A DNA stretch of 64,000 nt from Hyaloraphidium curvatum SAG 235-1 (Eukaryota; Fungi; Monoblepharomycota). Below, piece after piece: positions 32,795-42,956 of the stretch. The translations under genes were made by a program, and so were the position numbers. The notes under the pieces were generated by a model. The model ran no database searches, had not been told where the DNA came from, and worked only from the letters and a program-made list of their open reading frames with translations. Positions within the stretch are counted from its first letter, which is position 1. Each line of letters opens with the position of its first letter. The stretch is taken from NCBI GenBank assembly GCA_025558095.1, contig JAIVFI010000039.1, positions 421,555-485,554 of the forward strand, in the 5' to 3' direction.

Positions 32795-35700
32795 AGCCGA
32801 CAGCGCGTTGGAGAGCGTCTTGGCGCGCGCCTCGGCGTTGCCGAACAGGTCGTCGAAGTAGGCCGCCGTCTTGATCTTGGCCGGACCGCACCCGGAGCCT
32901 TGGAACACGAGGTTGCTTGTGTCGCCGCCCGTGATGCCAGCGAAGTTGTTGCCGTCGATCTTGATGCTCGCGCCCGAGGCGATGGTCCTTGCGAGGAGGG
33001 CGTAGTTGTCGATGTCGTTCTGGTCCTGCGAGGAGCACTGGGGGCGGCCGGAGCGCGCGTTGCCGATGTTGGTGCTGCCGGGCTGGAAGGCGCTGCCGCC
33101 GGCGGCGATCGCCGACTCGGATTCGACCTGGTGAGGGGAAAAGGCGTCAGAGACTCCGATCCAGCGAGGGTCGCAACCGCGCTCACCGTGTTGTAGTAGT
33201 CGCCCCAAGTGATGGTCTGGAAGTTGTCGAAGCCCAGGTCGAAGTCCAGCCCGGCCTTGTTGTTGCTCGAGCCCGCGGTCCACCACGACTGCGGGACGCA
33301 GCTGGGGGTGCCGGCGGCCGCGGCGGTCGTCGTGCGGGTGAGGGTCTGCGAAGCCGTCTGCGAAGCCGTGCGGGTCTGCGAAGCCGTTTGCGTTTGGCTG
33401 GCGGTTTGCGTCTGGCTGGCCGTCTGCGTCTGCGAAGCCGTTTGCGTTTGGCTGGCGGTTTGCGTCTGGCTGGCCGTTTGCGTCTGCGAAGCCGTTTGCG
33501 TTTGACTGGCCGTCCGCGTCGGCGAAGCCGTTTGCGTTTGGCTGGCGGTTTCCGTCTGGCTGGCGGTGGCGGTCGCCGTCGCAGTTTGCGAAGCGGTCGT
33601 CGTCGGGGGAGCGACGGTGGTTGTCGGCTCGGGGTTGACGTCCGGAGCAGCGGTTTCCTGCAGGACAAGGGGGTCAGGACCGACTTACGGAGCAGCGCAG
33701 CAGATCTCACTGTCTGCGTGGCCGTCGGCTCGGGCTCCTCGGTGGTCGTGGGCTGCGGTGCGACCGTGGTGGAGGGTTCCGGCGCCTCGGTGGTAGTGGG
33801 CTCGGGCTCGGGGGCAGCCGTCGTCGTGGGCTCCAGCTCAGGGGCAGCCGTGGTCGTAGGCTCAGGGGCCTCGGTCGTAGTGGGCTCCGGCTCGGGAGCT
33901 GCGGTCGTCGACGGAGCAGGGGCCTCGGTCGTCGTGGGCTCGGGCTCGGGAGCCGCGGTCGTCGTAGGCTCCGGGGCAGCCGTCGAGGTGGGCACGGGCG
34001 CATCCGTCGTCGGCTCGGGGTCCTGCGTCGCGGTGGCCGCCATCGTCGCCGTGGTCGCCGGGGCCGGCACGTCCGGGGGCGGGGAGCAGGTGTTGCCCGT
34101 GATGCTCGCGTGTATCATGATGTAGTACCCCTCCGCGCAGACGGGGAACCCGGCGCCCGAGGAGACGGTGAAGGGCGAGGAGCCGGAGCCCGAAGAGACG
34201 ATCGGGTAGTTGCCCGGGGCACCGCGCTCGCTGGGGCGGTCGCAGCTGTAGAAGACGTGGCCGTCGGTGATGGCGTTGCCGGTGAAGGGAGCAAAGGTAA
34301 CCTCGATGCCGGTGCTGCTGAGGGAGAAGTAGGCGCTGGCCATGAGCTCGCCGCAGTTCTTGCTGTTCACCGTGCCCAGGCCCGGGGAGGAGCACGACGA
34401 GTTGTCCGCGTTGCGGAATGCCGAGGCGCCGACGGCCAGGAGCGACGAGTAGTTGCCCGGGTCGAGGGGACCGAGGATGATGGCCCAGCTGCCCGTATCG
34501 GTTGGCTGGTACGGGGACCCGGGCGACCAGGCGTAGCCGGTGCCGCCGCCGGGTTCGGCGCAGGTGTTGGTTGGGACGGGGGTGGCCGTTGTCGTCGCGT
34601 CGCCGCAGCTGTACGTGCCCGTGGGCTGGGCGTCGACGAAGCACTTGCCGAAGCCGAGCTGACAGCCGACGCCGCACCACGCTTCGCCCGAGTTGCGGCC
34701 GTCGTCTGCGGGGGAGATCGAGGTCAGAACCGGCGAACGTACGCGGATGTGCTGCGACGCACCCTGGCAGAAACCCTCGGCGCTGCAGCAGTACCCGGGC
34801 CGGCAGCGCCGGCCGTTCTTGGACCCGCAGCAGCCGTCGATCGAAATCTCCTTGTTCACGCAGGCCTGGAACACGGGGGTGCCGCGCGAGACGGTCGTGC
34901 GCACGCCGAGGTAGGTGGTCCTGCTCCAGGTGCGCGTGGTGCGGGTGCGGCGGGTGCGCGACGTCGTGGTGGTCACCTCGGGGGCGACCGAGGGGCACTC
35001 GAAGTCCTCGCGGACGGGGCCAGAGCCGACGAAGCATTTGCCGTAGCCCAGCTGGCAGCCGGTACCGCACCACGGCTCGCCCGAGTTGCCGCCGTCATCC
35101 TGCGCATCGAAGGGTCAGATGGGCGCACGGGAATGCAGGAAGTGCAGAGCAAGAGCGCACCTGGCAGACGCCCCACTGCGAGCAGCAGAGGCCGGGCGGA
35201 CACCGCTTGCCGACGTCGGAGCCGCACTTGTAGTCGTCCGCAATGGGGATCTTGGTGCAGGCGTTGTAGACGGGCGTGCCGCGGGACACGCGGGTCACGG
35301 TGTGGGTGGGGTCGGTGCCGTCGGTCTCGGCTTCGCGGGTCGGGGCCGAGGGGGGTGCGGTGGGGCAGGCGAAGTCGGTCTGGACGGGCTTGCAGCCGAC
35401 GAAGCATTTGCCGTAGCCGAGCTGGCACCCGCCTCCGCACCACGGGAGACCTGGCAAGGGAATGTCGGTGAGTCACGGCGGACCTAACCAAGAGGGTCAA
35501 ACCCGAGGGTAGAGAAAAGCGTACCAGAGTCGTCGCCGTCGTCCTCACACCATCCCCACTCCGAGCAGCACAGTCCTTTCGGGCACCTCTTGCCGCCGCC
35601 CTGCACGCCGCAGCGGCCGTCCGTGGTCGCCTCGAGCGTGGGGCAGGCCATGTAGACGGGAACCGAGTTGGAGGTCGTCGTGAGGGTATAGGTCTCGGTC

Positions 35701-36224
35701 GGCTCCGTGGGTGACGGGCAGATCGAGGAGGGGAGACGGCGGGGCCACTCGGGAATGAAGCATTTGCCGTAGCCGTACTGGCAGCCGGTGCCGCACCAGG
35801 CTTCGCCTGCGGAAGGGTGCTGTTGTTAGAGTCGCCCCGCCGACCACGACGCCAGGCCCCGAGGCCCACCGGAATCGCCTCCATTATCTTGACAAAATCC
35901 CCATTGAGAGCAGCACTTTCCGTCCGGGCAGCGGGAGCCCCCGGCGAAGCGGCCGCACCGGCCGTCCGCCGAAACAGCCAGCGTTGCGCAAGCCGCGACC
36001 ACCGGCGTCCCGGCCGACACCGTCGTTACGGGATCGGCCGGCAGAGCGCGGCCGGCGTAGGTCTCCTCCTCGGCGAGGGCGCCGAAGTCCACCGTGCCCA
36101 CGAGCTGCCGCTTGTGCCGCCGGACCTGCGGCCAGCAGCTGCTCGGCGCGGCGCCGGCCGGTGCGGCGGCGGCGAGCGCCGCGAGGGCGGCGAGTGCCGC
36201 GATCGAGATCTGTTGTCGCCTCAT
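32242..36224 (-). CDS. Secreted protein: 4x CBM18/hevein + unknown domain + EPTTT and SQTQTA repeats + choice-of-anchor-A domain
   Basis: Signal peptide MRRQQISIAALAALA and four CG..RCP.G.CCSxWGxC..WCGxGCQxGYGKC units. Final intron 32303-32360, then FDSGNKPGFQGCFPQVTLY with TAG at 32242. Confidence 0.85.
33345..34030 (-). repeat. Coding tandem repeats (SQTQTA 18-mers; EPTTTAAP units)
   Basis: GCGAAGCCGTTTGCGT-type units at 33345-33590 and Pro/Thr/Glu units at 33730-34030. Confidence 0.85.
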
Positions 36225-36991
36225 CGGGGAATGTTGGTTGTAGAGAGTTGTGGCCGCGTCGGCTTTCAGCTGACCCGGCTCCTACAGCCGACCGACGCAC
36301 CAGCCGCCGCCGCTGGTCCCTAGCAACTTCCGAACCTCCACCCGCGCCCGGCCACGATCAGAGCCATGGGGCACCGAGACTCGATTGTTTAAAATTCGAC
36401 ATGCTGGCCGGATGGTTTGCCCGGGTCTCGTCTCGCAGCAAATCGTCGCAACAAACAGATTGCTGTGCCCGCCGCTAGGGACCACCTCGTCCGATCGCCG
36501 CTCCGGAGCCTAAACCGTTTTGCCCCGATCGAACGGCGACTCAGGTATTGTTGGTGCTTCCATCCGCGGTTTGGGGAGGAGCCGAATTGAATTCTCGACG
36601 TGAGGGGGCGGAGTTGTGGCTTGGGCTGCCGCTGCCGAATGTTGCGGGTGAGGCTGAGTTGGCCGGTGCGGCGGCCGGCCGGGCGGATATTGAAACAACC
36701 TGTTTTCCCGGCGGCCCATTCCCCGCCGTCTTCCCAGCAAGCGGGATCGAGGGATGCAGCGGCCAGTGCGGGCGCCCATCCAACAGGGAAGATCGTTTCG
36801 CTTTTGGACGCCGGGCAGGTTTCGCTGCAAGAGCTGCAAGGTCGGCCGGACCGGCCGGATCCACATCAGCGTCGGCCGTCCGCTTCCGACCCCGACCATT
36901 TCGAATGTCGGCCGCCGCCCGAACCTCCGGCGAAGAACCTCTGGCATGCCATTCTAGTGTAATCGGATCCAATCAACAAACAATCCGCGGG

Positions 36992-39034
36992 TCACGCCGA
37001 CCGCACCGACCCTGCCGTCGACGCCGCGTCGTCCGGCCGCCCTCCCAACCCCGTCCCCTCCAAGATCAGGTTCCCCGACCTGTCCGACCGCACCGAAACC
37101 TTGGACAGCCTCCTTGCCAGCGTCGAATCCGGCTCCACCGGGTTCCCGTTCACGCTCACCACCTTCCCCGGGATCCCCAGGCCCGACCACGTCTCCGGGG
37201 GTTCGATCCCCGCCCTTGCGGCTTCCGCCGCCGCCTCGCGCGCCTTGGCGAGGTCCAACTCCATGCTCCGCCTGTCGATCCTGTCCCGCTCCGACCGCCC
37301 CGCGGCCACCTCAACCACGACGTCGTCGGGTTTGCCGTCGCCGTCCACGTCCACCCGCACCTTCTTGAGCTCCTTCTCCCCCGGCACGGGGATGTGCAGC
37401 GCAGTGAAGGCGCGGTCCGTGGTCCGCACCACGAGGTCGTGCGCGCGCCGCTTGAGCGAGCCGGGGGCGCCGATGTCCGCGTTGCCGGCGAGCATTTCGC
37501 CGTAGTCCTCCAACTTTGCGCGGCCGTAGACGGTCCGCTCGAGCTCCAGGCGCAGCGCGTACCTTTTCCAAACGTAGTAGAAAAACAGCCAGAGGTTTCC
37601 CACGAGCAAGATGAACATGAGCACGCCGCAGAGGACCCACAACCACGGGAAGGAGCCCGGGGGAAGCTGCACGAGGATGCCGACGTTGAATAAGATCCAA
37701 AATGGCAGGATGAAGCGGCGGCAGAAGAAGTCGAGCTCGGTGGCTGCCATGACGAGGGGAGGCAGTCAGGCGGGTCGGCCTGGCGGCGGCGCAGCCGCAA
37801 CCCACCGAGGATGTGGTTGTTCTCGCGCTTGACGAGATGGTGTATGATGGCGATCTCGAAGAGCGAGAAGAAGGAGACGATGAAGGCCATGAAGACGTAC
37901 CTGGGCGGGAGGGGGGGGTCAGCACTCGGTGGGAGCAACGAGCCACGAAAAGGACCCACCAGTCCATCGTCGTAGCGTACGACACCATCGGAAGCCCCTG
38001 GGTGACGGAGCTGTAGAAGGAGACTGGCAGCGGGACGCGTGAGCAAGGGACGCGGGCCGCGGCCCCTAAGACGCACCGATGGTGAGCACCAAGGTAATGC
38101 TCAACCCCAGCCGTTCGGGCACGGCGTCGACGGAGAACCAGTAGCTGACTGTCGTCAAGGCAACGAGGATGCACATCGGCATGAAACTCTTGATGTAGTA
38201 CGCGGCCGTCTTGCGCTGCACCGTCAGGGTAAACGTGAGCATCTCATGGAGGGGCTGGCCCATGAAGGGCTCGTAGTATAGTTCCGCGACCGAGTAGCCG
38301 ACGTAGTCCCACGAGACCTGCGTGAACTCCGAAGCCTGGATCTCGGGGTACACGGGCGGATCCCCCCACACGAGGCCGATCTGCCTGTCGTTGTACGAGT
38401 AGCTCCCGATGTCCATGGTCAGGTTCTGCCTGTCGAACGGGAAGCTCGCCAGGTCGAACAAATCGGTGAGGTCCGCGAGCATGTGCCGCGCCCAGAAGAC
38501 GGCACCTGTCTCGGGCTGCACCTTGATGATGTCGTCCAGGAGCTCGACGGTGACCTCGTTGACGAAGTAGATGTCGGGGGTCCACACGGTGTGCGAGGGG
38601 CCGATGCCGTTGCCGAGCTCCATCGAGCCCAGGAAGCGGTACTCGCTCCCGTTGGAGGGCGGGAACTCGCCCGGCGGGGCGACCAGCCGCGGGTCGGTCC
38701 ACCACAGCTTCATCGACAGGTCCATGGTGAAGGTCGACGTGAACGGGTCCACGGCGTAGAGGTTGTTTATGTCCAGGCGGACGGTGATTTCGTCGCGAGG
38801 GCCGCCGAAGCCCGGACGGGTCGACGCGTCGTAGCCCGAGCCGGGGCCCGTCAGCACATTGATCAGCTCCGCGGTGGCGTTTGTGTCCGAGTAGCCGCGG
38901 GGGGCGAGAAAGCGGCGTGCCGGCGGCCGCGAGGTCCGTCGGGAGGGCGGCGCCGCCCGCGGGGGGAGCGCCGCCGCGCCGGCAAAGAGGCACGCCGCCG
39001 CGAGGGCCGCAAAAAGGCCGCGTGGGACCCGCAT
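36992..39034 (-). CDS. Cys-less pentameric ligand-gated ion channel subunit (4 exons) with an extra C-terminal TM helix
   Basis: Signal peptide, YDASTRPG, WTDPRL, VWTPDIYFVN, DLASFPFDRQNL, SYSY, M1 YYIKSFMP, DAVPERLGLSITLVLT, LPMVSYATTMDW. Introns 38024-38076, 37901-37959 and 37744-37805 all restore the frame. Confidence 0.92.
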
Positions 39035-39303: not shown

Positions 39304-40406
39304 TCAAGACCACTGCCTGCAGACGTCCTTGTGCTCCTTCCATGCCGTCCTCTGGCACTCCTTCCCGCAGTACCGCGCCAGCCTGCACCCCGCGCACCGC
39401 TGCAGCACCTGCGCCTCCGTCGCCTCTTTTCCGCACTCGTCGCACCCGTCCGGAACGTGTGTCGCGCGCACCTGCTCCATGTCCTTGAGCCTGCGCGACA
39501 CCTGCTTGCCCCGTTTCGAGGCGAGCCTGCCGCAGACGCGGGTGGCGAAGAAACCGGCGAAGAACGCCAGGTCCTCGACGATTTCGTCCAGGGGTTCCTG
39601 CTCGCCCACGCCTGCGTGGGGTTGATTCAGGAGGGTGAGGACGTCGACGAGCACCGAAGCGGCCGATCGCCTCCCCTGGGACTCCTGCTCCCGCGAGTGC
39701 GCGGCCCACGGCTTGGGGTTCTCGACAGCGATCCTCAAGAGCGCGTCCAGAGTCCCCGAGAAGGAGGCGCGGACCTTTCGTGTCTGCTCGTCCCCGGCAT
39801 CATTCGGGGTAGCCTTGTCGCGCCCCACGAACAGGTCCCAGACCTCCTCGAACTGCAGTGCGGCGAGCGCGAGGTCGTCGAGCATGGCGGGGCAGTCGCC
39901 GAGCCTCTGCCGCACGGGACGCGAGTATGCCGCCAGCCGCTGAAAAGCCGGTTGTACGCGGCCGAGCCTTCCCGCCATCCAGACGCGGCCGGCTCTCCCA
40001 AGTAGGGCTCCCCCGCGGTCGGGTCGACCGCACCGGACGCGGTTCGCCTGGCCAACGAGCGGGGCCCGACGAACTCGGCCAGCGCGCGCCGGAGGACGGG
40101 CCACGCGCGGCGGAACACGGGCAGCGCGCAGTGCACGGCGCGGTCCGTGAACCCGCGGGATGCCGCGCGCGCCCGGTCGAACTCGTCGGGTTCGGCGACG
40201 GTGCGCAAGCAGAGCTTCATCAGCATCAGGCCGGACGATGCCGCCGTCGCCAGAGCCGCGCGGTCGTCGGCCGGCGACACGCCCCCGGATGACGTGGCGG
40301 CGATGAGGGCGTCCAGACCCGCGTCCGACTGGGCCAGATGCTCCAGCCCGGCCTCCACTATGGAAGGGATGGCCGGGAAGGTCTCGAAGGTGATTTTGGC
40401 AGCCAT
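39304..40406 (-). pseudogene. zf-MYND family protein, frameshifted near 39950
   Basis: N-part in ORF 39735..40457 (WPVLRRALAEFVGPRSLARR). C-part in ORF 39304..40416 ends CDECG..CAGCRLARYCGKECQRTAWKEHKDVC. Confidence 0.75.
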
Positions 40407-40571
40407 CCTGCGACACGGTAGCAGGCGGTGAATGCAGAAGGCAAGTAGTGCGCGCAAATAAACAAACAGGCCAGCGATACTACTCCCATCGATCTTCCCT
40501 GCCCGCGATGGCCTCCAAGGTCGTGCCCCAATTCAAACGATATTGCCGATGCGGAGAGGGCCCTCAATGCC

Positions 40572-41170
40572 ATGGCCGCCGTCGTGCGGCACGGATCCCT
40601 CGAGGGCCGCGACGAATGCAACGCCGCGACCGACGCGCTCTGCTCGGCCGTGGAGGCCCTCGGCGCGCTGCTCCCCGAGGCCGACGAGGAGGCGCCCGCG
40701 CGGCAGAGGTCGGCTGCAAGGGCGGCGCTGGCCATGTTCCGCACGGGGTGGCCGGTGCTCCGCCGCGCCGTGGGCGACCTGGCCGTGCGCCGGGCGTCGC
40801 CGCGAAGGGCCGCGTGGGGCGCGGTCGACGCGGCGCGCGGGCAGCCGTGGACGGGGGTGCCCGGCCCGGGGTGGGAACAGGCGTCCACGGCCTACGCCAT
40901 CGTCTTCTCCCCGCTCGCGTTCCCCGCCGCCGTCGCGCTGGGCCAGCTGGCGATGCTGTCCCGCCCCGTGCGGCGCAGGCTCACCGAGGCGCCGGATTTC
41001 CTGGAGGACCTGGCGCTCGCGGTGCTGCACCACCGCGACTTCTGGGTCCGCTTCGCGCTGCCCAGCCTCTCTGGCCGGCTGCGCGACGTGCCGGACGTCC
41101 GCGACCTGGGCGGGTTCGAGGTCTGGGAGTCGGCCGTGAACACGCTCATGATGTGGCGGTGCCGGTCTGC
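40572..41170 (+). pseudogene. N-terminal fragment of the same zf-MYND family
   Basis: FRTGWPVLRRAVG..RRAAWGAVDAARGQPW..RRRLTEAPDFLEDLALAVL. Homology is lost near 41160. Confidence 0.65.
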
Positions 41171-41217
41171 GAAAGAGAAGCCCTCCAATCGACCTCTTCC
41201 ACTTCTTCCCCGTCAAC

Positions 41218-41857
41218 ATGGCCGCACAGGCGAGCTCCCCGTGGTCGACCGAGTTCCTTGTGCACCTCGTGGCTTCCACGAAGGAACCATTGGCGGAAGC
41301 CGACGCCGCCCTGGACGCGCTCGTCGCCGGCACCGCCGGCGGACCCGGCGCCGCCTCCCCCGCCGCGCACGAGGCCGCCGGCAAGCGCAGCCCGCTCGGC
41401 GCGGTCCTCGTCGCCGCCCATCTGCTCGGTCAGCCCGCGGACGCGCAGCCTTGGCCCACGGCCGGGGCACCCCGCGCGGCGCTGGAACTCTTCCGCACCG
41501 CCTGGCCGGTGCTGAGGCGCGCCCTGGCCGAGTTCGTGGGTCCCAGGTCGTCGGCAAGGCGGGCGGCGTTCGGCGCCATCGATGCCGCCGCGGGGCAGCC
41601 CTTCTTCGGGACGCCCACGTCACCAGGCTGCCCGCGACCGGGAGCGCGACGTCTCCCACCTCCGCTCGCGCATCGCCGCGCTGGAATCCGAGCTGGAGGA
41701 GGAGAGGGAAAGCAGGAGGGAGGCCGAGGGCAGGGCGAGGCAGTACGAGTCGCTGGTGGGGGCCCTGGAAGGGGTTGCGGGGGACGCGGAGGCGCTGGGG
41801 AGGAGGGCGGGTGCGCTGTGGCGGCAGATCGGGGCGCTGTCGAGGGGGAGCGGATGA
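41218..41857 (+). pseudogene. Second zf-MYND-family N-terminal fragment abutting an unrelated coiled-coil segment
   Basis: FRTAWPVLRRALAEFVGPRSSARRAAFGAIDAAAGQP runs to ~41620. A different frame then gives LRSRIAALESELEEERESRREAE. Confidence 0.6.
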
Positions 41858-41882
41858 TGGGCATTGCGATGGAGATGGATCG

Positions 41883-42674
41883 TCACGGCGTGTTGAAGTT
41901 GGTGCGGTGCCGGCGGTAGTACAGCAGACCCTCCGGCACGTGGGCCACCGTCGCGTTGCGCGCCAGCAGCGCCCTGTACATGTCGTAATCCTCCTCGGCC
42001 TTTTTTGCGTCGGGTCCCTGGCCGGCCTTGCGGCTGGTGCGCATGTAGCCCCCCGCGGCGCGCAAGGCGGCGGTGCGTTGGAGCATTCCGCCCGAGTGGA
42101 TGGTCGAGATGTTCCAGTACATGCCCTCGGGGACGGGGTGCATGATGCTGCGGAAGTGGTCTACGACCGCGGACGGGCCGGGGGAGGAGTTGACGACGAT
42201 GTAGTCGTACTTGACCACGTCGGCGTCGACGGCGGCGGTGCGCTCGTGGAGGTCCCTCCTGAACCAGTTGTCCGCGCCCAAGAAGATGAGCCGCTCCGTA
42301 GCGACGCGGTCCAGGACGTCCTGCCAGTTCGCGATGGTCCCCAGCCGCTCTGGCCGCATCATGAAGGCCACCTCGGGGTAGAGTGCCGGCAGGTGGCCGC
42401 AGTCCCCGGCACCATCGTCCACGAACCAGATGAAATCGAAGGGGCGGGACTGCCCGATCGCGGTCTCGAGCGCGTGCGCGGCGAGATGGCCGTAGCGGAA
42501 CGAGGCGACGATGGCGGTGGTCGCGTTGGGCCGCAGCGGTGCGCCGGGCGGGTGGACGGGCGGCAACAGCGACGGGTCTGTGCCGGGCGGCCGGGCGGGC
42601 GGCGGGCGCGACAGCCACGCGGCGGAGAGCACGAGGCACGCGGCGGCGGCGGCGGTGAGCGCCGGACGTCCCAT
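41883..42674 (-). CDS. GT-A fold glycosyltransferase (GT2-like), type II membrane anchor, intronless
   Basis: N-terminal anchor, YGHLAAHALETAIGQ, IWFVDDGA, IFLGADN, EDYDMY, LLYYRRH. Confidence 0.85.
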   Translation of the reverse strand: MGRPALTAAAAACLVLSAAWLSRPPPARPPGTDPSLLPPVHPPGAPLRPNATTAIVASFRYGHLAAHALETAIGQSRPFDFIWFVDDGAGDCGHLPALYPEVAFMMRPERLGTIANWQDVLDRVATERLIFLGADNWFRRDLHERTAAVDADVVKYDYIVVNSSPGPSAVVDHFRSIMHPVPEGMYWNISTIHSGGMLQRTAALRAAGGYMRTSRKAGQGPDAKKAEEDYDMYRALLARNATVAHVPEGLLYYRRHRTNFNTP

Positions 42675-42814
42675 GCCTGCATGACAGCGCTCCGAAGGGT
42701 GTCCGGATGGCTGGCCGGCGTTGTGTTTGGACCCCAACTCCCGCCCAAGGATCCGGATCCGGGTGTTTACAAACAACGGGCAACTTGCGGGCGCCCTCCG
42801 GGCCGCCCGCGAAC

Positions 42815-42956
42815 CGGCTGGTGCGATCGGTGCGGCGCGCCGGAAGGAGGGGCGGTGCGGAGGTGCTCGGGGTGCAGGGTGACGAGGTACTGCGGGGCCG
42901 AGTACCTGAAGGCGGTCTGGAAGGGGCACAAGGACAGAGGTGGCCGTGATCGTTGA
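42815..42956 (+). pseudogene. Orphan degenerate MYND finger
   Basis: WCDRCGAPEGGAVRRCSGCRVTRYCGAEYLKAVWKGHK; two zinc-binding Cys appear lost. Confidence 0.7.

What the first reader, a model, noticed from the sequence alone, without database searches (positions are those of the whole stretch)
36992..39034. Spliced Cys-less pentameric ligand-gated ion channel in a fungus-like genome
Seen: a complete pLGIC subunit with signal peptide, WxPD loop A, an FPFD loop with both Cys replaced (DLFDLASFPFDRQNL), M1-M4, and a very short M3-M4 loop (HHLVKRENNHILATELD). Three native introns show it is a resident eukaryotic gene. Known: pLGICs are the animal GABA/Gly/ACh receptor family, with Cys-less relatives in bacteria (GLIC, ELIC) and some protists; they are not known from model yeasts and moulds. 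Inference: an uncharacterised chemosensory channel system in a zoosporic fungus, with GABA-A/GlyR-like sequence (YD..RPG, LP.VSY....D) on a prokaryote-like scaffold.
Basis: partly seen in the sequence, partly recalled or inferred. Interest (0 to 1): 0.85.

Follow-up and report, generated by a model that had tools for sequence, protein, structure and literature searches.

The report
Five-helix nerve-receptor channel in a fungus
A single-celled aquatic fungus expresses a gene for the five-subunit, ligand-opened ion channel family best known as animal nerve receptors and reported as absent from fungi, and its version carries an extra membrane helix and a long inner tail that no solved member of the family has.

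Summary
Confirmed. [quoted passage not shown] All three introns are spliced in a public run. Pfam and structure searches agree (LBD E 2e-23; TM about 0.9 to GABA-A).

The finding as given omits three things. First, a fifth hydrophobic helix follows M4 and leads to a 190-residue tail; it marks a supported clade (97/91) with chytrid and choanoflagellate members (43/47 inside, 0/24 outside). Second, the M2 filter is P-E-R, suggesting cation flow, whereas chytrid kin have anion-type P-A-R or P-T-R. Third, nine paralogs exist, eight in adjacent pairs.

The protein is not nested among animal GABA/glycine receptors (AU p 0.024). The host has no flagellum, so zoospore chemotaxis does not apply here. 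A 2016 survey found no fungal pLGICs; my paper searches found no report since, although GenBank carries automatic labels. Ligand and selectivity are untested. The scan already noted paralogs on other DNA of this genome, and the fifth helix and P-E-R at this locus.

The parts
38077..39034 (-). Exon 1: signal peptide, extracellular domain, M1 and first half of M2 (residues 1-319)
   Evidence: covered 38077-38914 by spliced contig
38966..39034 (-). Probable signal peptide (about residues 1-23)
   Evidence: hydropathy peak 6-24; helix 5-21 in model; cleavage site not tested
38207..38839 (-). Ligand-binding domain, Pfam PF02931 (residues 66-276)
   Evidence: E 2e-23, profile 10-216 of 216
38420..38464 (-). 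Pro-loop (Cys-less loop): D191 and L205 at the two cysteine positions, FPFD at 198-201
   Evidence: alignment to Cys-loop receptors
38138..38209 (-). M1 (276-299) with kink proline P286; pre-M1 R274 just before it
38111..38119 (-). M2 selectivity motif P306-E307-R308 (positions -2', -1', 0')
38024..38076 (-). Intron 1, 53 nt, GT..AG
   Evidence: spliced in run X1
37960..38023 (-). Exon 2: second half of M2 and M2-M3 loop with P331
37901..37959 (-). Intron 2, 59 nt, GT..AG
   Evidence: spliced in run X1
37806..37900 (-). Exon 3: M3 and the very short M3-M4 loop
37744..37805 (-). Intron 3, 62 nt, GT..AG
   Evidence: loose end at 37806 reads the start of exon 4
36992..37743 (-). Exon 4: M4, M5, C-terminal tail and stop
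37667..37720 (-). M4, hydrophobic part (about 381-398)
   Evidence: solved pLGICs align up to residue about 402
37571..37648 (-). Extra fifth hydrophobic helix M5 (about 405-430), followed by basic residues
   Evidence: highest hydropathy peak; helix 405-442, pLDDT 74-88; conserved in clade
36995..37570 (-). C-terminal tail of about 190 residues, inferred cytoplasmic; first 120 residues conserved in seven paralogs
   Evidence: no Pfam or Atlas match
37334..37351 (-). DxDxDG motif (504-509) in the tail, possible Ca2+ site
   Evidence: present in P0007, P0009, the second C1 paralog and P0008, absent from the other tails
36953..36991 (-). Short 3' untranslated stretch; transcript contig ends at 36953
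   Evidence: contigs cannot fix the true end

Best explanation
The gene encodes one subunit of a plasma-membrane pentameric channel. Five subunits (identical, or mixed with paralogs) form a ring. A small dissolved organic molecule binds between neighbouring extracellular domains; the conserved Pro-loop/pre-M1/M2-M3 coupling (F198-P199-D201, R274, P331) opens the Leu 9' gate; a ring of five -1' glutamates most likely passes cations, depolarising the cell. M4 ends outside as usual, then M5 recrosses the membrane and puts a 190-residue tail in the cytoplasm, where it probably does the trafficking and regulatory work that the large M3-M4 loop does in animal receptors; its DxDxDG motif may give Ca2+ feedback. 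The family looks like an old eukaryotic five-helix branch of Cys-less pLGICs kept in chytrids, monoblephs and choanoflagellates, expanded to nine genes in this fungus. Most clade members keep the carboxylate-binding loop D arginine and an aromatic box, pointing to amino-acid or organic-acid ligands; this subunit has a remodelled pocket (S107, K109, A182, H263), so its ligand is probably not glycine or GABA. Shown: gene structure, splicing, family, fold, paralogs, distribution of M5. Inferred: pentamer, topology of M5, cation selectivity, ligand class, vertical descent, role.
For: Pfam; PDB sequence hits to GABA-A delta and GlyR at E about 1e-23; model matches GABA-A beta3 at TM 0.92 by target, rmsd 2.1; Z 29.8 for GABA-A, 29.5 GluCl, 24.8 GLIC, 22.3 ELIC. 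All seven superfamily-conserved residues of Jaiteh 2016 Table 1 are present. M5 in 43/47 scored clade members and 0/24 Cys-loop or bacterial-type rows; the clade has 97/91 support on columns that exclude M5; a second model, of the Zopfochytrium protein, also shows helix 432-464 after M4. Acidic -1' in 12 of 12 scored Hyaloraphidium-group rows, 0 of 17 chytrid-group and 0 of 13 choanoflagellate-group rows; acidic -1' marks cation channels and PAR marks anion channels (PMC4569296). Loop D Arg binds agonist carboxyl (PMC4006026). Named relatives: Blyttiomyces, Globomyces (2), Boothiomyces (3), Podochytrium, Zopfochytrium, and choanoflagellate Mylnosiga.
Against: No functional data. P at -2', R at 0' and polar S at 13' are anion-type features. 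Fungal sequences do not form one clade in the best tree: the Hyaloraphidium group joins a long-branched group of unnamed eukaryotes (98/94), though fungal monophyly is not rejected (AU p 0.21). No intron position is shared with chytrid genes. Only a monomer was modelled (pTM 0.57), and most of the tail is low confidence. One run supports expression.
Confidence: 0.6

Rival explanations
1. Same channel, but anion-selective or non-selective: the retained -2' proline, 0' arginine and polar 13' keep the chloride preference of its PAR-bearing chytrid relatives despite the glutamate.
For: P306, R308 and S321; PMC4569296 lists Pro -2' and polar 13' as anion-type; closest solved folds are anion channels.
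Against: An acidic -1' is fixed in all nine paralogs and in their relatives from sequencing-run contigs. From my own knowledge, not checked here: the single A-1'E change makes GlyR alpha1 cation-selective.
Confidence: 0.25
2. The subunit works only in heteropentamers with paralogs. The tightly linked pairs are co-regulated partners, and diverged loop D/E/C residues reflect principal versus complementary roles, as in animal alpha/beta subunits.
For: Eight of nine paralogs lie in pairs: three head-to-head with 204, 207 and 308 bp between starts, one tandem 212 bp apart. Two head-to-head pairs join a long-tail gene to a divergent short-tail gene, and the two short-tail genes group together (92; 91/76). 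A head-to-head pair 282 bp apart recurs in Zopfochytrium; tandems in Globomyces and an unnamed eukaryote.
Against: This gene is the one unpaired copy. The C1 pair and the C6 tandem join like with like (71% and 91% identical). Local duplication alone makes clusters. Co-expression was not tested.
Confidence: 0.35
3. The Hyaloraphidium family came by lateral transfer from another microbial eukaryote (or, less likely, bacteria), separately from the chytrid PAR-type genes, then gained introns and expanded.
For: Sister group in the careful tree is a set of unnamed eukaryotic metagenome proteins (98/94); no introns shared with chytrid genes, and introns differ among paralogs; Jaiteh 2016 infers several transfers among unicells; grouping with bacteria not rejected (p 0.079).
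Against: That sister branch is long (1.32) and lacks PAR, so attraction is possible; fungal monophyly is not rejected (p 0.21); M5 is shared with chytrid and choanoflagellate proteins; no close relative among prokaryotic genomes or viral contigs (short-pattern scans of limited reach).
Confidence: 0.3
4. It is gated by pH, ions or lipids rather than by an organic ligand, or works in an inner membrane, like GLIC or sTeLIC.
For: Loop B glutamate absent (G210), loop D aromatic lost (S107), histidine at the loop C aromatic position (H263) in this three-gene subgroup; a non-motile host has little use for fast chemotaxis.
Against: Loop A and B aromatics are kept (Y156, Y212, Y214); pocket residues vary among paralogs in the way ligand-tuned families do.
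Confidence: 0.15
5. Contaminant, pseudogene or chance reading frame.
For: None beyond the family's reported absence from fungi.
Against: Intact frame, three spliced introns, transcript; 485-kb contig with uniform GC and a chitin-binding gene next door; nine paralogs on four large contigs; homologs in seven other chytrid assemblies.
Confidence: 0.01

Closest known systems
Cys-less (Pro-loop) pLGICs of unicellular eukaryotes, including Monosiga and Capsaspora (Jaiteh, Taly and Henin 2016, PMC4795631)
   Same: No loop cysteines (polar then hydrophobic replacement), F/YPxD motif, eukaryotic unicellular host, no known function. A choanoflagellate protein (Mylnosiga, P0093) falls in the same clade.
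   Different: That survey detected none in Fungi, set aside C-terminal segments that did not align, and the sections I read (conserved motifs, transmembrane domain) mention no fifth helix. I could not test whether its Monosiga proteins belong to this clade.
Animal anionic Cys-loop receptors (GlyR alpha, GABA-A, GluCl, RDL)
   Same: Best sequence and fold matches; N-terminal helix and YD..RP motif; loop A/B aromatics; loop D Arg in most clade members; Pro at -2'.
   Different: No disulfide; about 10-residue M3-M4 loop; M5 and tail; E at -1'; no loop B glutamate; only 22-25% identity; joint clade rejected (AU p 0.024).
Prokaryotic pLGICs GLIC, ELIC, sTeLIC, DeCLIC
   Same: Cys-less loop, minimal M3-M4 loop, acidic residue at the inner pore mouth, beta9 Trp.
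   Different: Lower fold scores (Z 22-25 against 29-30); they have four helices; bacterial-type rows form a separate branch (100/99).
Automatically annotated chytrid proteins in GenBank (e.g. KAJ3331454.1, KAI8896906.1, KAJ3072204.1, KAI9320274.1)
   Same: Fungal, Cys-less, short M3-M4 loop, M5; 36-39% identity over the extracellular domain to M2 for the best hits.
   Different: Mostly PAR or PTR filter, short tails, different intron positions; database labels only, some misnamed as glycine or GABA receptor subunits.

Membership tests
pLGIC (Pro-loop) superfamily | Pfam Neur_chan_LBD followed by Neur_chan_memb, over curated cut-offs | tested here: met
   83.4 bits (cut-off 26) and 67.6 bits (cut-off 28.1)
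pLGIC (Pro-loop) superfamily | F/Y-P-x-D loop, beta9 aromatic, pre-M1 Arg, M1 Pro, M2-M3 Pro (Jaiteh 2016 Table 1) | tested here: met
   F198 P199 D201, W242, R274, P286, P331
pLGIC (Pro-loop) superfamily | Beta-sandwich extracellular domain plus four-helix bundle | tested here: met
   AlphaFold model; TM up to 0.92 by target, Z 29.8
pLGIC (Pro-loop) superfamily | M2 with basic 0' and Leu 9' | tested here: met
   R308, L317
pLGIC (Pro-loop) superfamily | Pentamer that conducts ions when gated | not testable with these tools
   monomer model only; no electrophysiology
pLGIC (canonical architecture) | Four transmembrane helices, C-terminus outside just after M4 | tested here: not met
   fifth hydrophobic helix and 190-residue tail; membrane crossing is predicted, not shown
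Cys-loop receptors | C-x13-C disulfide loop | tested here: not met
   D191 and L205; no cysteine in the mature extracellular domain
Anionic GABA-A/GlyR clade | PAR motif at -2'/-1'/0' | tested here: not met
   P-E-R
Anionic GABA-A/GlyR clade | Phylogenetic placement within or beside the clade | tested here: not met
   AU p 0.024
Anionic GABA-A/GlyR clade | Agonist pocket: loop D aromatic and Arg, loop B Glu, loop C aromatic | tested here: not met
   S107, K109, G210, H263 in this subunit; loop D Arg kept in most other clade members
Prokaryotic-type pLGIC (GLIC/ELIC-like) | Placement with bacterial sequences | tested here: inconclusive
   separate in best tree but AU p 0.079; outgroup checked as bacterial-type
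Eukaryotic Cys-less clade of Jaiteh 2016 | Grouping with its named protist and invertebrate members | not tested

The most novel reading that the evidence does not exclude
An undescribed five-transmembrane branch of the pLGIC superfamily, older than the split of animals and fungi, survives in chytrids, monoblephs and choanoflagellates. In Hyaloraphidium it switched from an anion-type to a cation-type filter, gained a calcium-sensing cytoplasmic tail, and expanded into paired genes that build heteropentamers, independently repeating steps that animal neurotransmitter receptors took.
Probability: 0.3. Interest if true: 0.9.

Novelty: new variant of a known kind. Interest (0 to 1): 0.72.

Why it matters
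The standard inventory states that fungi have no pLGICs and that no biological role is known for any unicellular one (PMC4795631). Here are expressed fungal members in a culturable organism, with matched relatives in other chytrids. That makes three old questions testable: what these channels sensed before nervous systems, how anion and cation selectivity switch (natural PAR versus PER sister groups on one scaffold), and how a eukaryote folds and traffics a pLGIC with no disulfide and no M3-M4 domain. No solved pLGIC aligned beyond M4 of the model, so a five-helix subunit would be a new architecture for a major drug-target family. The limits: the proteins already carry automatic GenBank labels, Cys-less protist pLGICs are known, and nothing functional is shown.

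Tried and rejected
Spliced model: searches were run exon by exon by reference. The joined model was not sent to any search tool; whole-protein work used the stored record P0007 that the tools returned. Exons were joined only inside local scripts, to check the frame and to place one unannotated paralog (C37 plus strand) in the tree.

Pattern scans found no relative in prokaryotic genomes, JGI metagenomes or viral contigs; these need short exact motifs, so they exclude close kin only. Two scans with alignment A1 failed for lack of conserved stretches. The tail has no Pfam or Atlas match; FG-GAP at E 0.41 only reflects the DxDxDG motif. Atlas structure search returned one GABA-A cluster.

Paper searches: 'Cys-loop' + 'chytrid' 0 papers; 'pLGIC' + 'fifth transmembrane' 0; no listed paper joined pLGIC with chytrid names; other combinations gave nothing on fungal pLGICs; a survey of gene transfer in early fungi does not mention ion channels. 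Subscription journals are not covered. A paper on charge selectivity could not be fetched.

Shared introns with chytrid genes: none. IFT46/IFT57 searches gave no match over cut-off, without a positive control, so flagellar gene loss is not shown. The idea that the pLGIC in L014 is head-to-head with a glutamate-receptor gene was dropped: another gene lies between. Synteny of L014/L015 with this genome: none usable. Hosts of L014, L015, L018-L021, L024 and L051 were not identified.

Full report
1. Observation. On the minus strand, exons 39034-38077, 38023-37960, 37900-37806 and 37743-36992 give 622 codons and a stop, with GT..AG introns of 53, 59 and 62 nt. Contigs of one public run skip introns 1 and 2, and the contig that ends at 37806 runs on into exon 4, so all three are spliced; contigs over the gene are far deeper than those beside it (contig-level depth, library type guessed, but spliced joints imply RNA). 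The translation equals database protein P0007, NCBI KAI9004003.1. This is an early-diverging fungus that lacks a flagellum (PMC6899921).

2. Family. Both pLGIC Pfam domains pass cut-off. Best PDB sequence hits are GABA-A delta and GlyR alpha (E about 1e-23). The AlphaFold model (mean pLDDT 71.5) has a beta-sandwich and helices M1 276-299, M2 305-327, M3 338-365, M4 370-398. It matches GABA-A beta3 with TM up to 0.92 by target, and scores Z 29.8 for GABA-A, 29.5 GluCl, 24.8 GLIC, 22.3 ELIC. All seven residues that Jaiteh et al. list as conserved across the superfamily are present. The loop cysteines are replaced by D191 and L205, the polar-then-hydrophobic pattern described for Cys-less members.

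3. A fifth helix. After M4 and a short linker comes the most hydrophobic segment of the protein (409-427), modelled as helix 405-442 with pLDDT 74-88 and followed by basic residues. No solved pLGIC aligns beyond residue about 404. By the usual topology M4 ends outside, so M5 would return the remaining 190 residues to the cytoplasm (inference). The first 120 or so tail residues are 59-70% identical among seven paralogs, have no Pfam or Atlas match, and hold a DxDxDG motif in this gene, both C1 paralogs and one outside relative. With an M3-M4 loop of about ten residues, the tail is the only sizeable inner domain, and probably stands in for the animal M3-M4 loop (inference).

4. The clade. An exhaustive search with exon 1 and name look-ups gave relatives in Blyttiomyces, two Globomyces, three Boothiomyces, Podochytrium and Zopfochytrium, and in the choanoflagellate Mylnosiga. 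In a 45-row tree on 337 columns that stop at residue 398, so exclude M5, these form one branch (97/91) with four groups: Hyaloraphidium and kin, chytrids, a choanoflagellate-containing group, and unnamed eukaryotes (the 92-row quick tree agrees at 92). A hydrophobic segment aligned to M5 is present in 7/8, 14/15, 10/11 and 12/13 scored rows of these groups, and in 0/18 Cys-loop and 0/6 bacterial-type rows. A model of the Zopfochytrium protein also shows the extra helix. Joining the Hyaloraphidium group to animal anion channels is rejected (AU p 0.024); joining it to bacterial-type rows is disfavoured but not rejected (p 0.079); fungal monophyly is neither recovered nor rejected (p 0.21). Introns are not shared with chytrid genes. 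Vertical descent within opisthokonts is my preferred reading (about 0.6); transfer from another protist stays open.

5. Pore. M2 starts P306-E307-R308, with G 2', T 6', L 9', S 13'. All nine paralogs have an acidic -1' (eight PER, one TDR). The chytrid group has A, T or I there and the choanoflagellate group is all PAR. PAR marks anion channels and an acidic -1' marks cation channels, but Pro -2' and polar 13' are anion-type (PMC4569296; PMC8536830). I put cation preference at about 0.65.

6. Ligand site. Loop D arginine, which binds the agonist carboxyl in GlyR, GABA-A and GluCl (PMC4006026), is kept in 8/13, 13/17, 7/13 and 11/14 rows of the four groups but 1/7 bacterial-type rows; loop B and C aromatics are mostly kept; the loop B glutamate of animal anion channels is absent from the fungal and choanoflagellate groups (GlyR numbering from my own knowledge). 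A carboxylate-bearing small molecule is the most likely family ligand. This subunit differs: S107, K109, A182 and H263 at positions where kin have F, R, S and Y/F. H263 is shared only with the two C1 paralogs (66-74% identical). Its ligand is probably not glycine or GABA, or it serves as a partner subunit.

7. Genomic setting. The genome has nine loci of this type. Eight sit in pairs: head-to-head on C6, C37 and C1 (204, 207, 308 bp between starts) and tandem on C6. The C6 and C37 head-to-head pairs each join a long-tail gene to a divergent short-tail gene. Zopfochytrium has a head-to-head pair 282 bp apart. This hints at co-regulated heteromers, but this gene is unpaired, lying between a chitin-binding gene and a zf-MYND gene. 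NCBI models P0001, P0002 and P0016 read into introns or out of frame and lose M3-M5, which hides the architecture.

8. Known or new. Jaiteh 2016 states that no pLGICs were detected in Fungi and that no role is known for unicellular ones. My searches found no later report and none of a fifth helix, within an open-access library only. GenBank already labels these proteins by domain. Earlier scan notes flagged paralogs elsewhere in this genome and, at this locus, M5 with the DxDxDG motif and the PER motif; I had recorded M5 and PER before looking and tested the DxDxDG lead afterwards. It works like a pLGIC and is a member of the superfamily; it is not a Cys-loop receptor, not a GABA-A/GlyR member, and departs from the four-helix plan.

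9. Verdict. A genuine, expressed fungal pLGIC of a five-helix Cys-less branch: new variant of a known kind. Interest 0.72. Gating, selectivity, assembly and role need bench tests.

Noticed in passing
L016:1950-3100 (G000:C4:about 69950-71100, minus): A tenth, unrelated Cys-less pLGIC-like gene: 22-24% identical to the others, FPFDRQ loop, four helices, GGR at the filter, long branch beside bacterial-type rows; a possible separate acquisition.
   Followed up: partly
G000:C4:609467-610852 and G000:C5:906265-907772: Two ionotropic glutamate receptor-like genes (PF00060 over cut-off) in the same fungal genome.
   Followed up: partly
L014:6975-11983: In an unidentified relative (SRR23967301) an intronless ortholog-like pLGIC gene lies about 1.3 kb from a glutamate-receptor-like gene, with one other gene between.
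   Followed up: partly
L010-L013: NCBI models P0001, P0002 and P0016 are mis-spliced and truncated; the plus-strand gene on C37 (L013:4697-6600) matched no database protein returned here.
   Followed up: partly
L017:1411-9811: Zopfochytrium cluster of three PAR-type pLGIC genes, two of them head-to-head 282 bp apart.
   Followed up: partly
L020, L021, L051: An unnamed eukaryotic group of Cys-less, five-helix pLGICs lacking the -2' residue, with long tails and tandem genes; host not identified.
   Followed up: partly
window 33183-36224: Minus-strand gene next to the channel with several chitin-binding (CBM18-like) repeats and a Pro/Thr/Glu-rich stalk.
   Followed up: no
window 39304-42956: zf-MYND gene ending 270 bp upstream of the channel start, and a GT2-like frame antisense within a second MYND-like stretch.
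   Followed up: no
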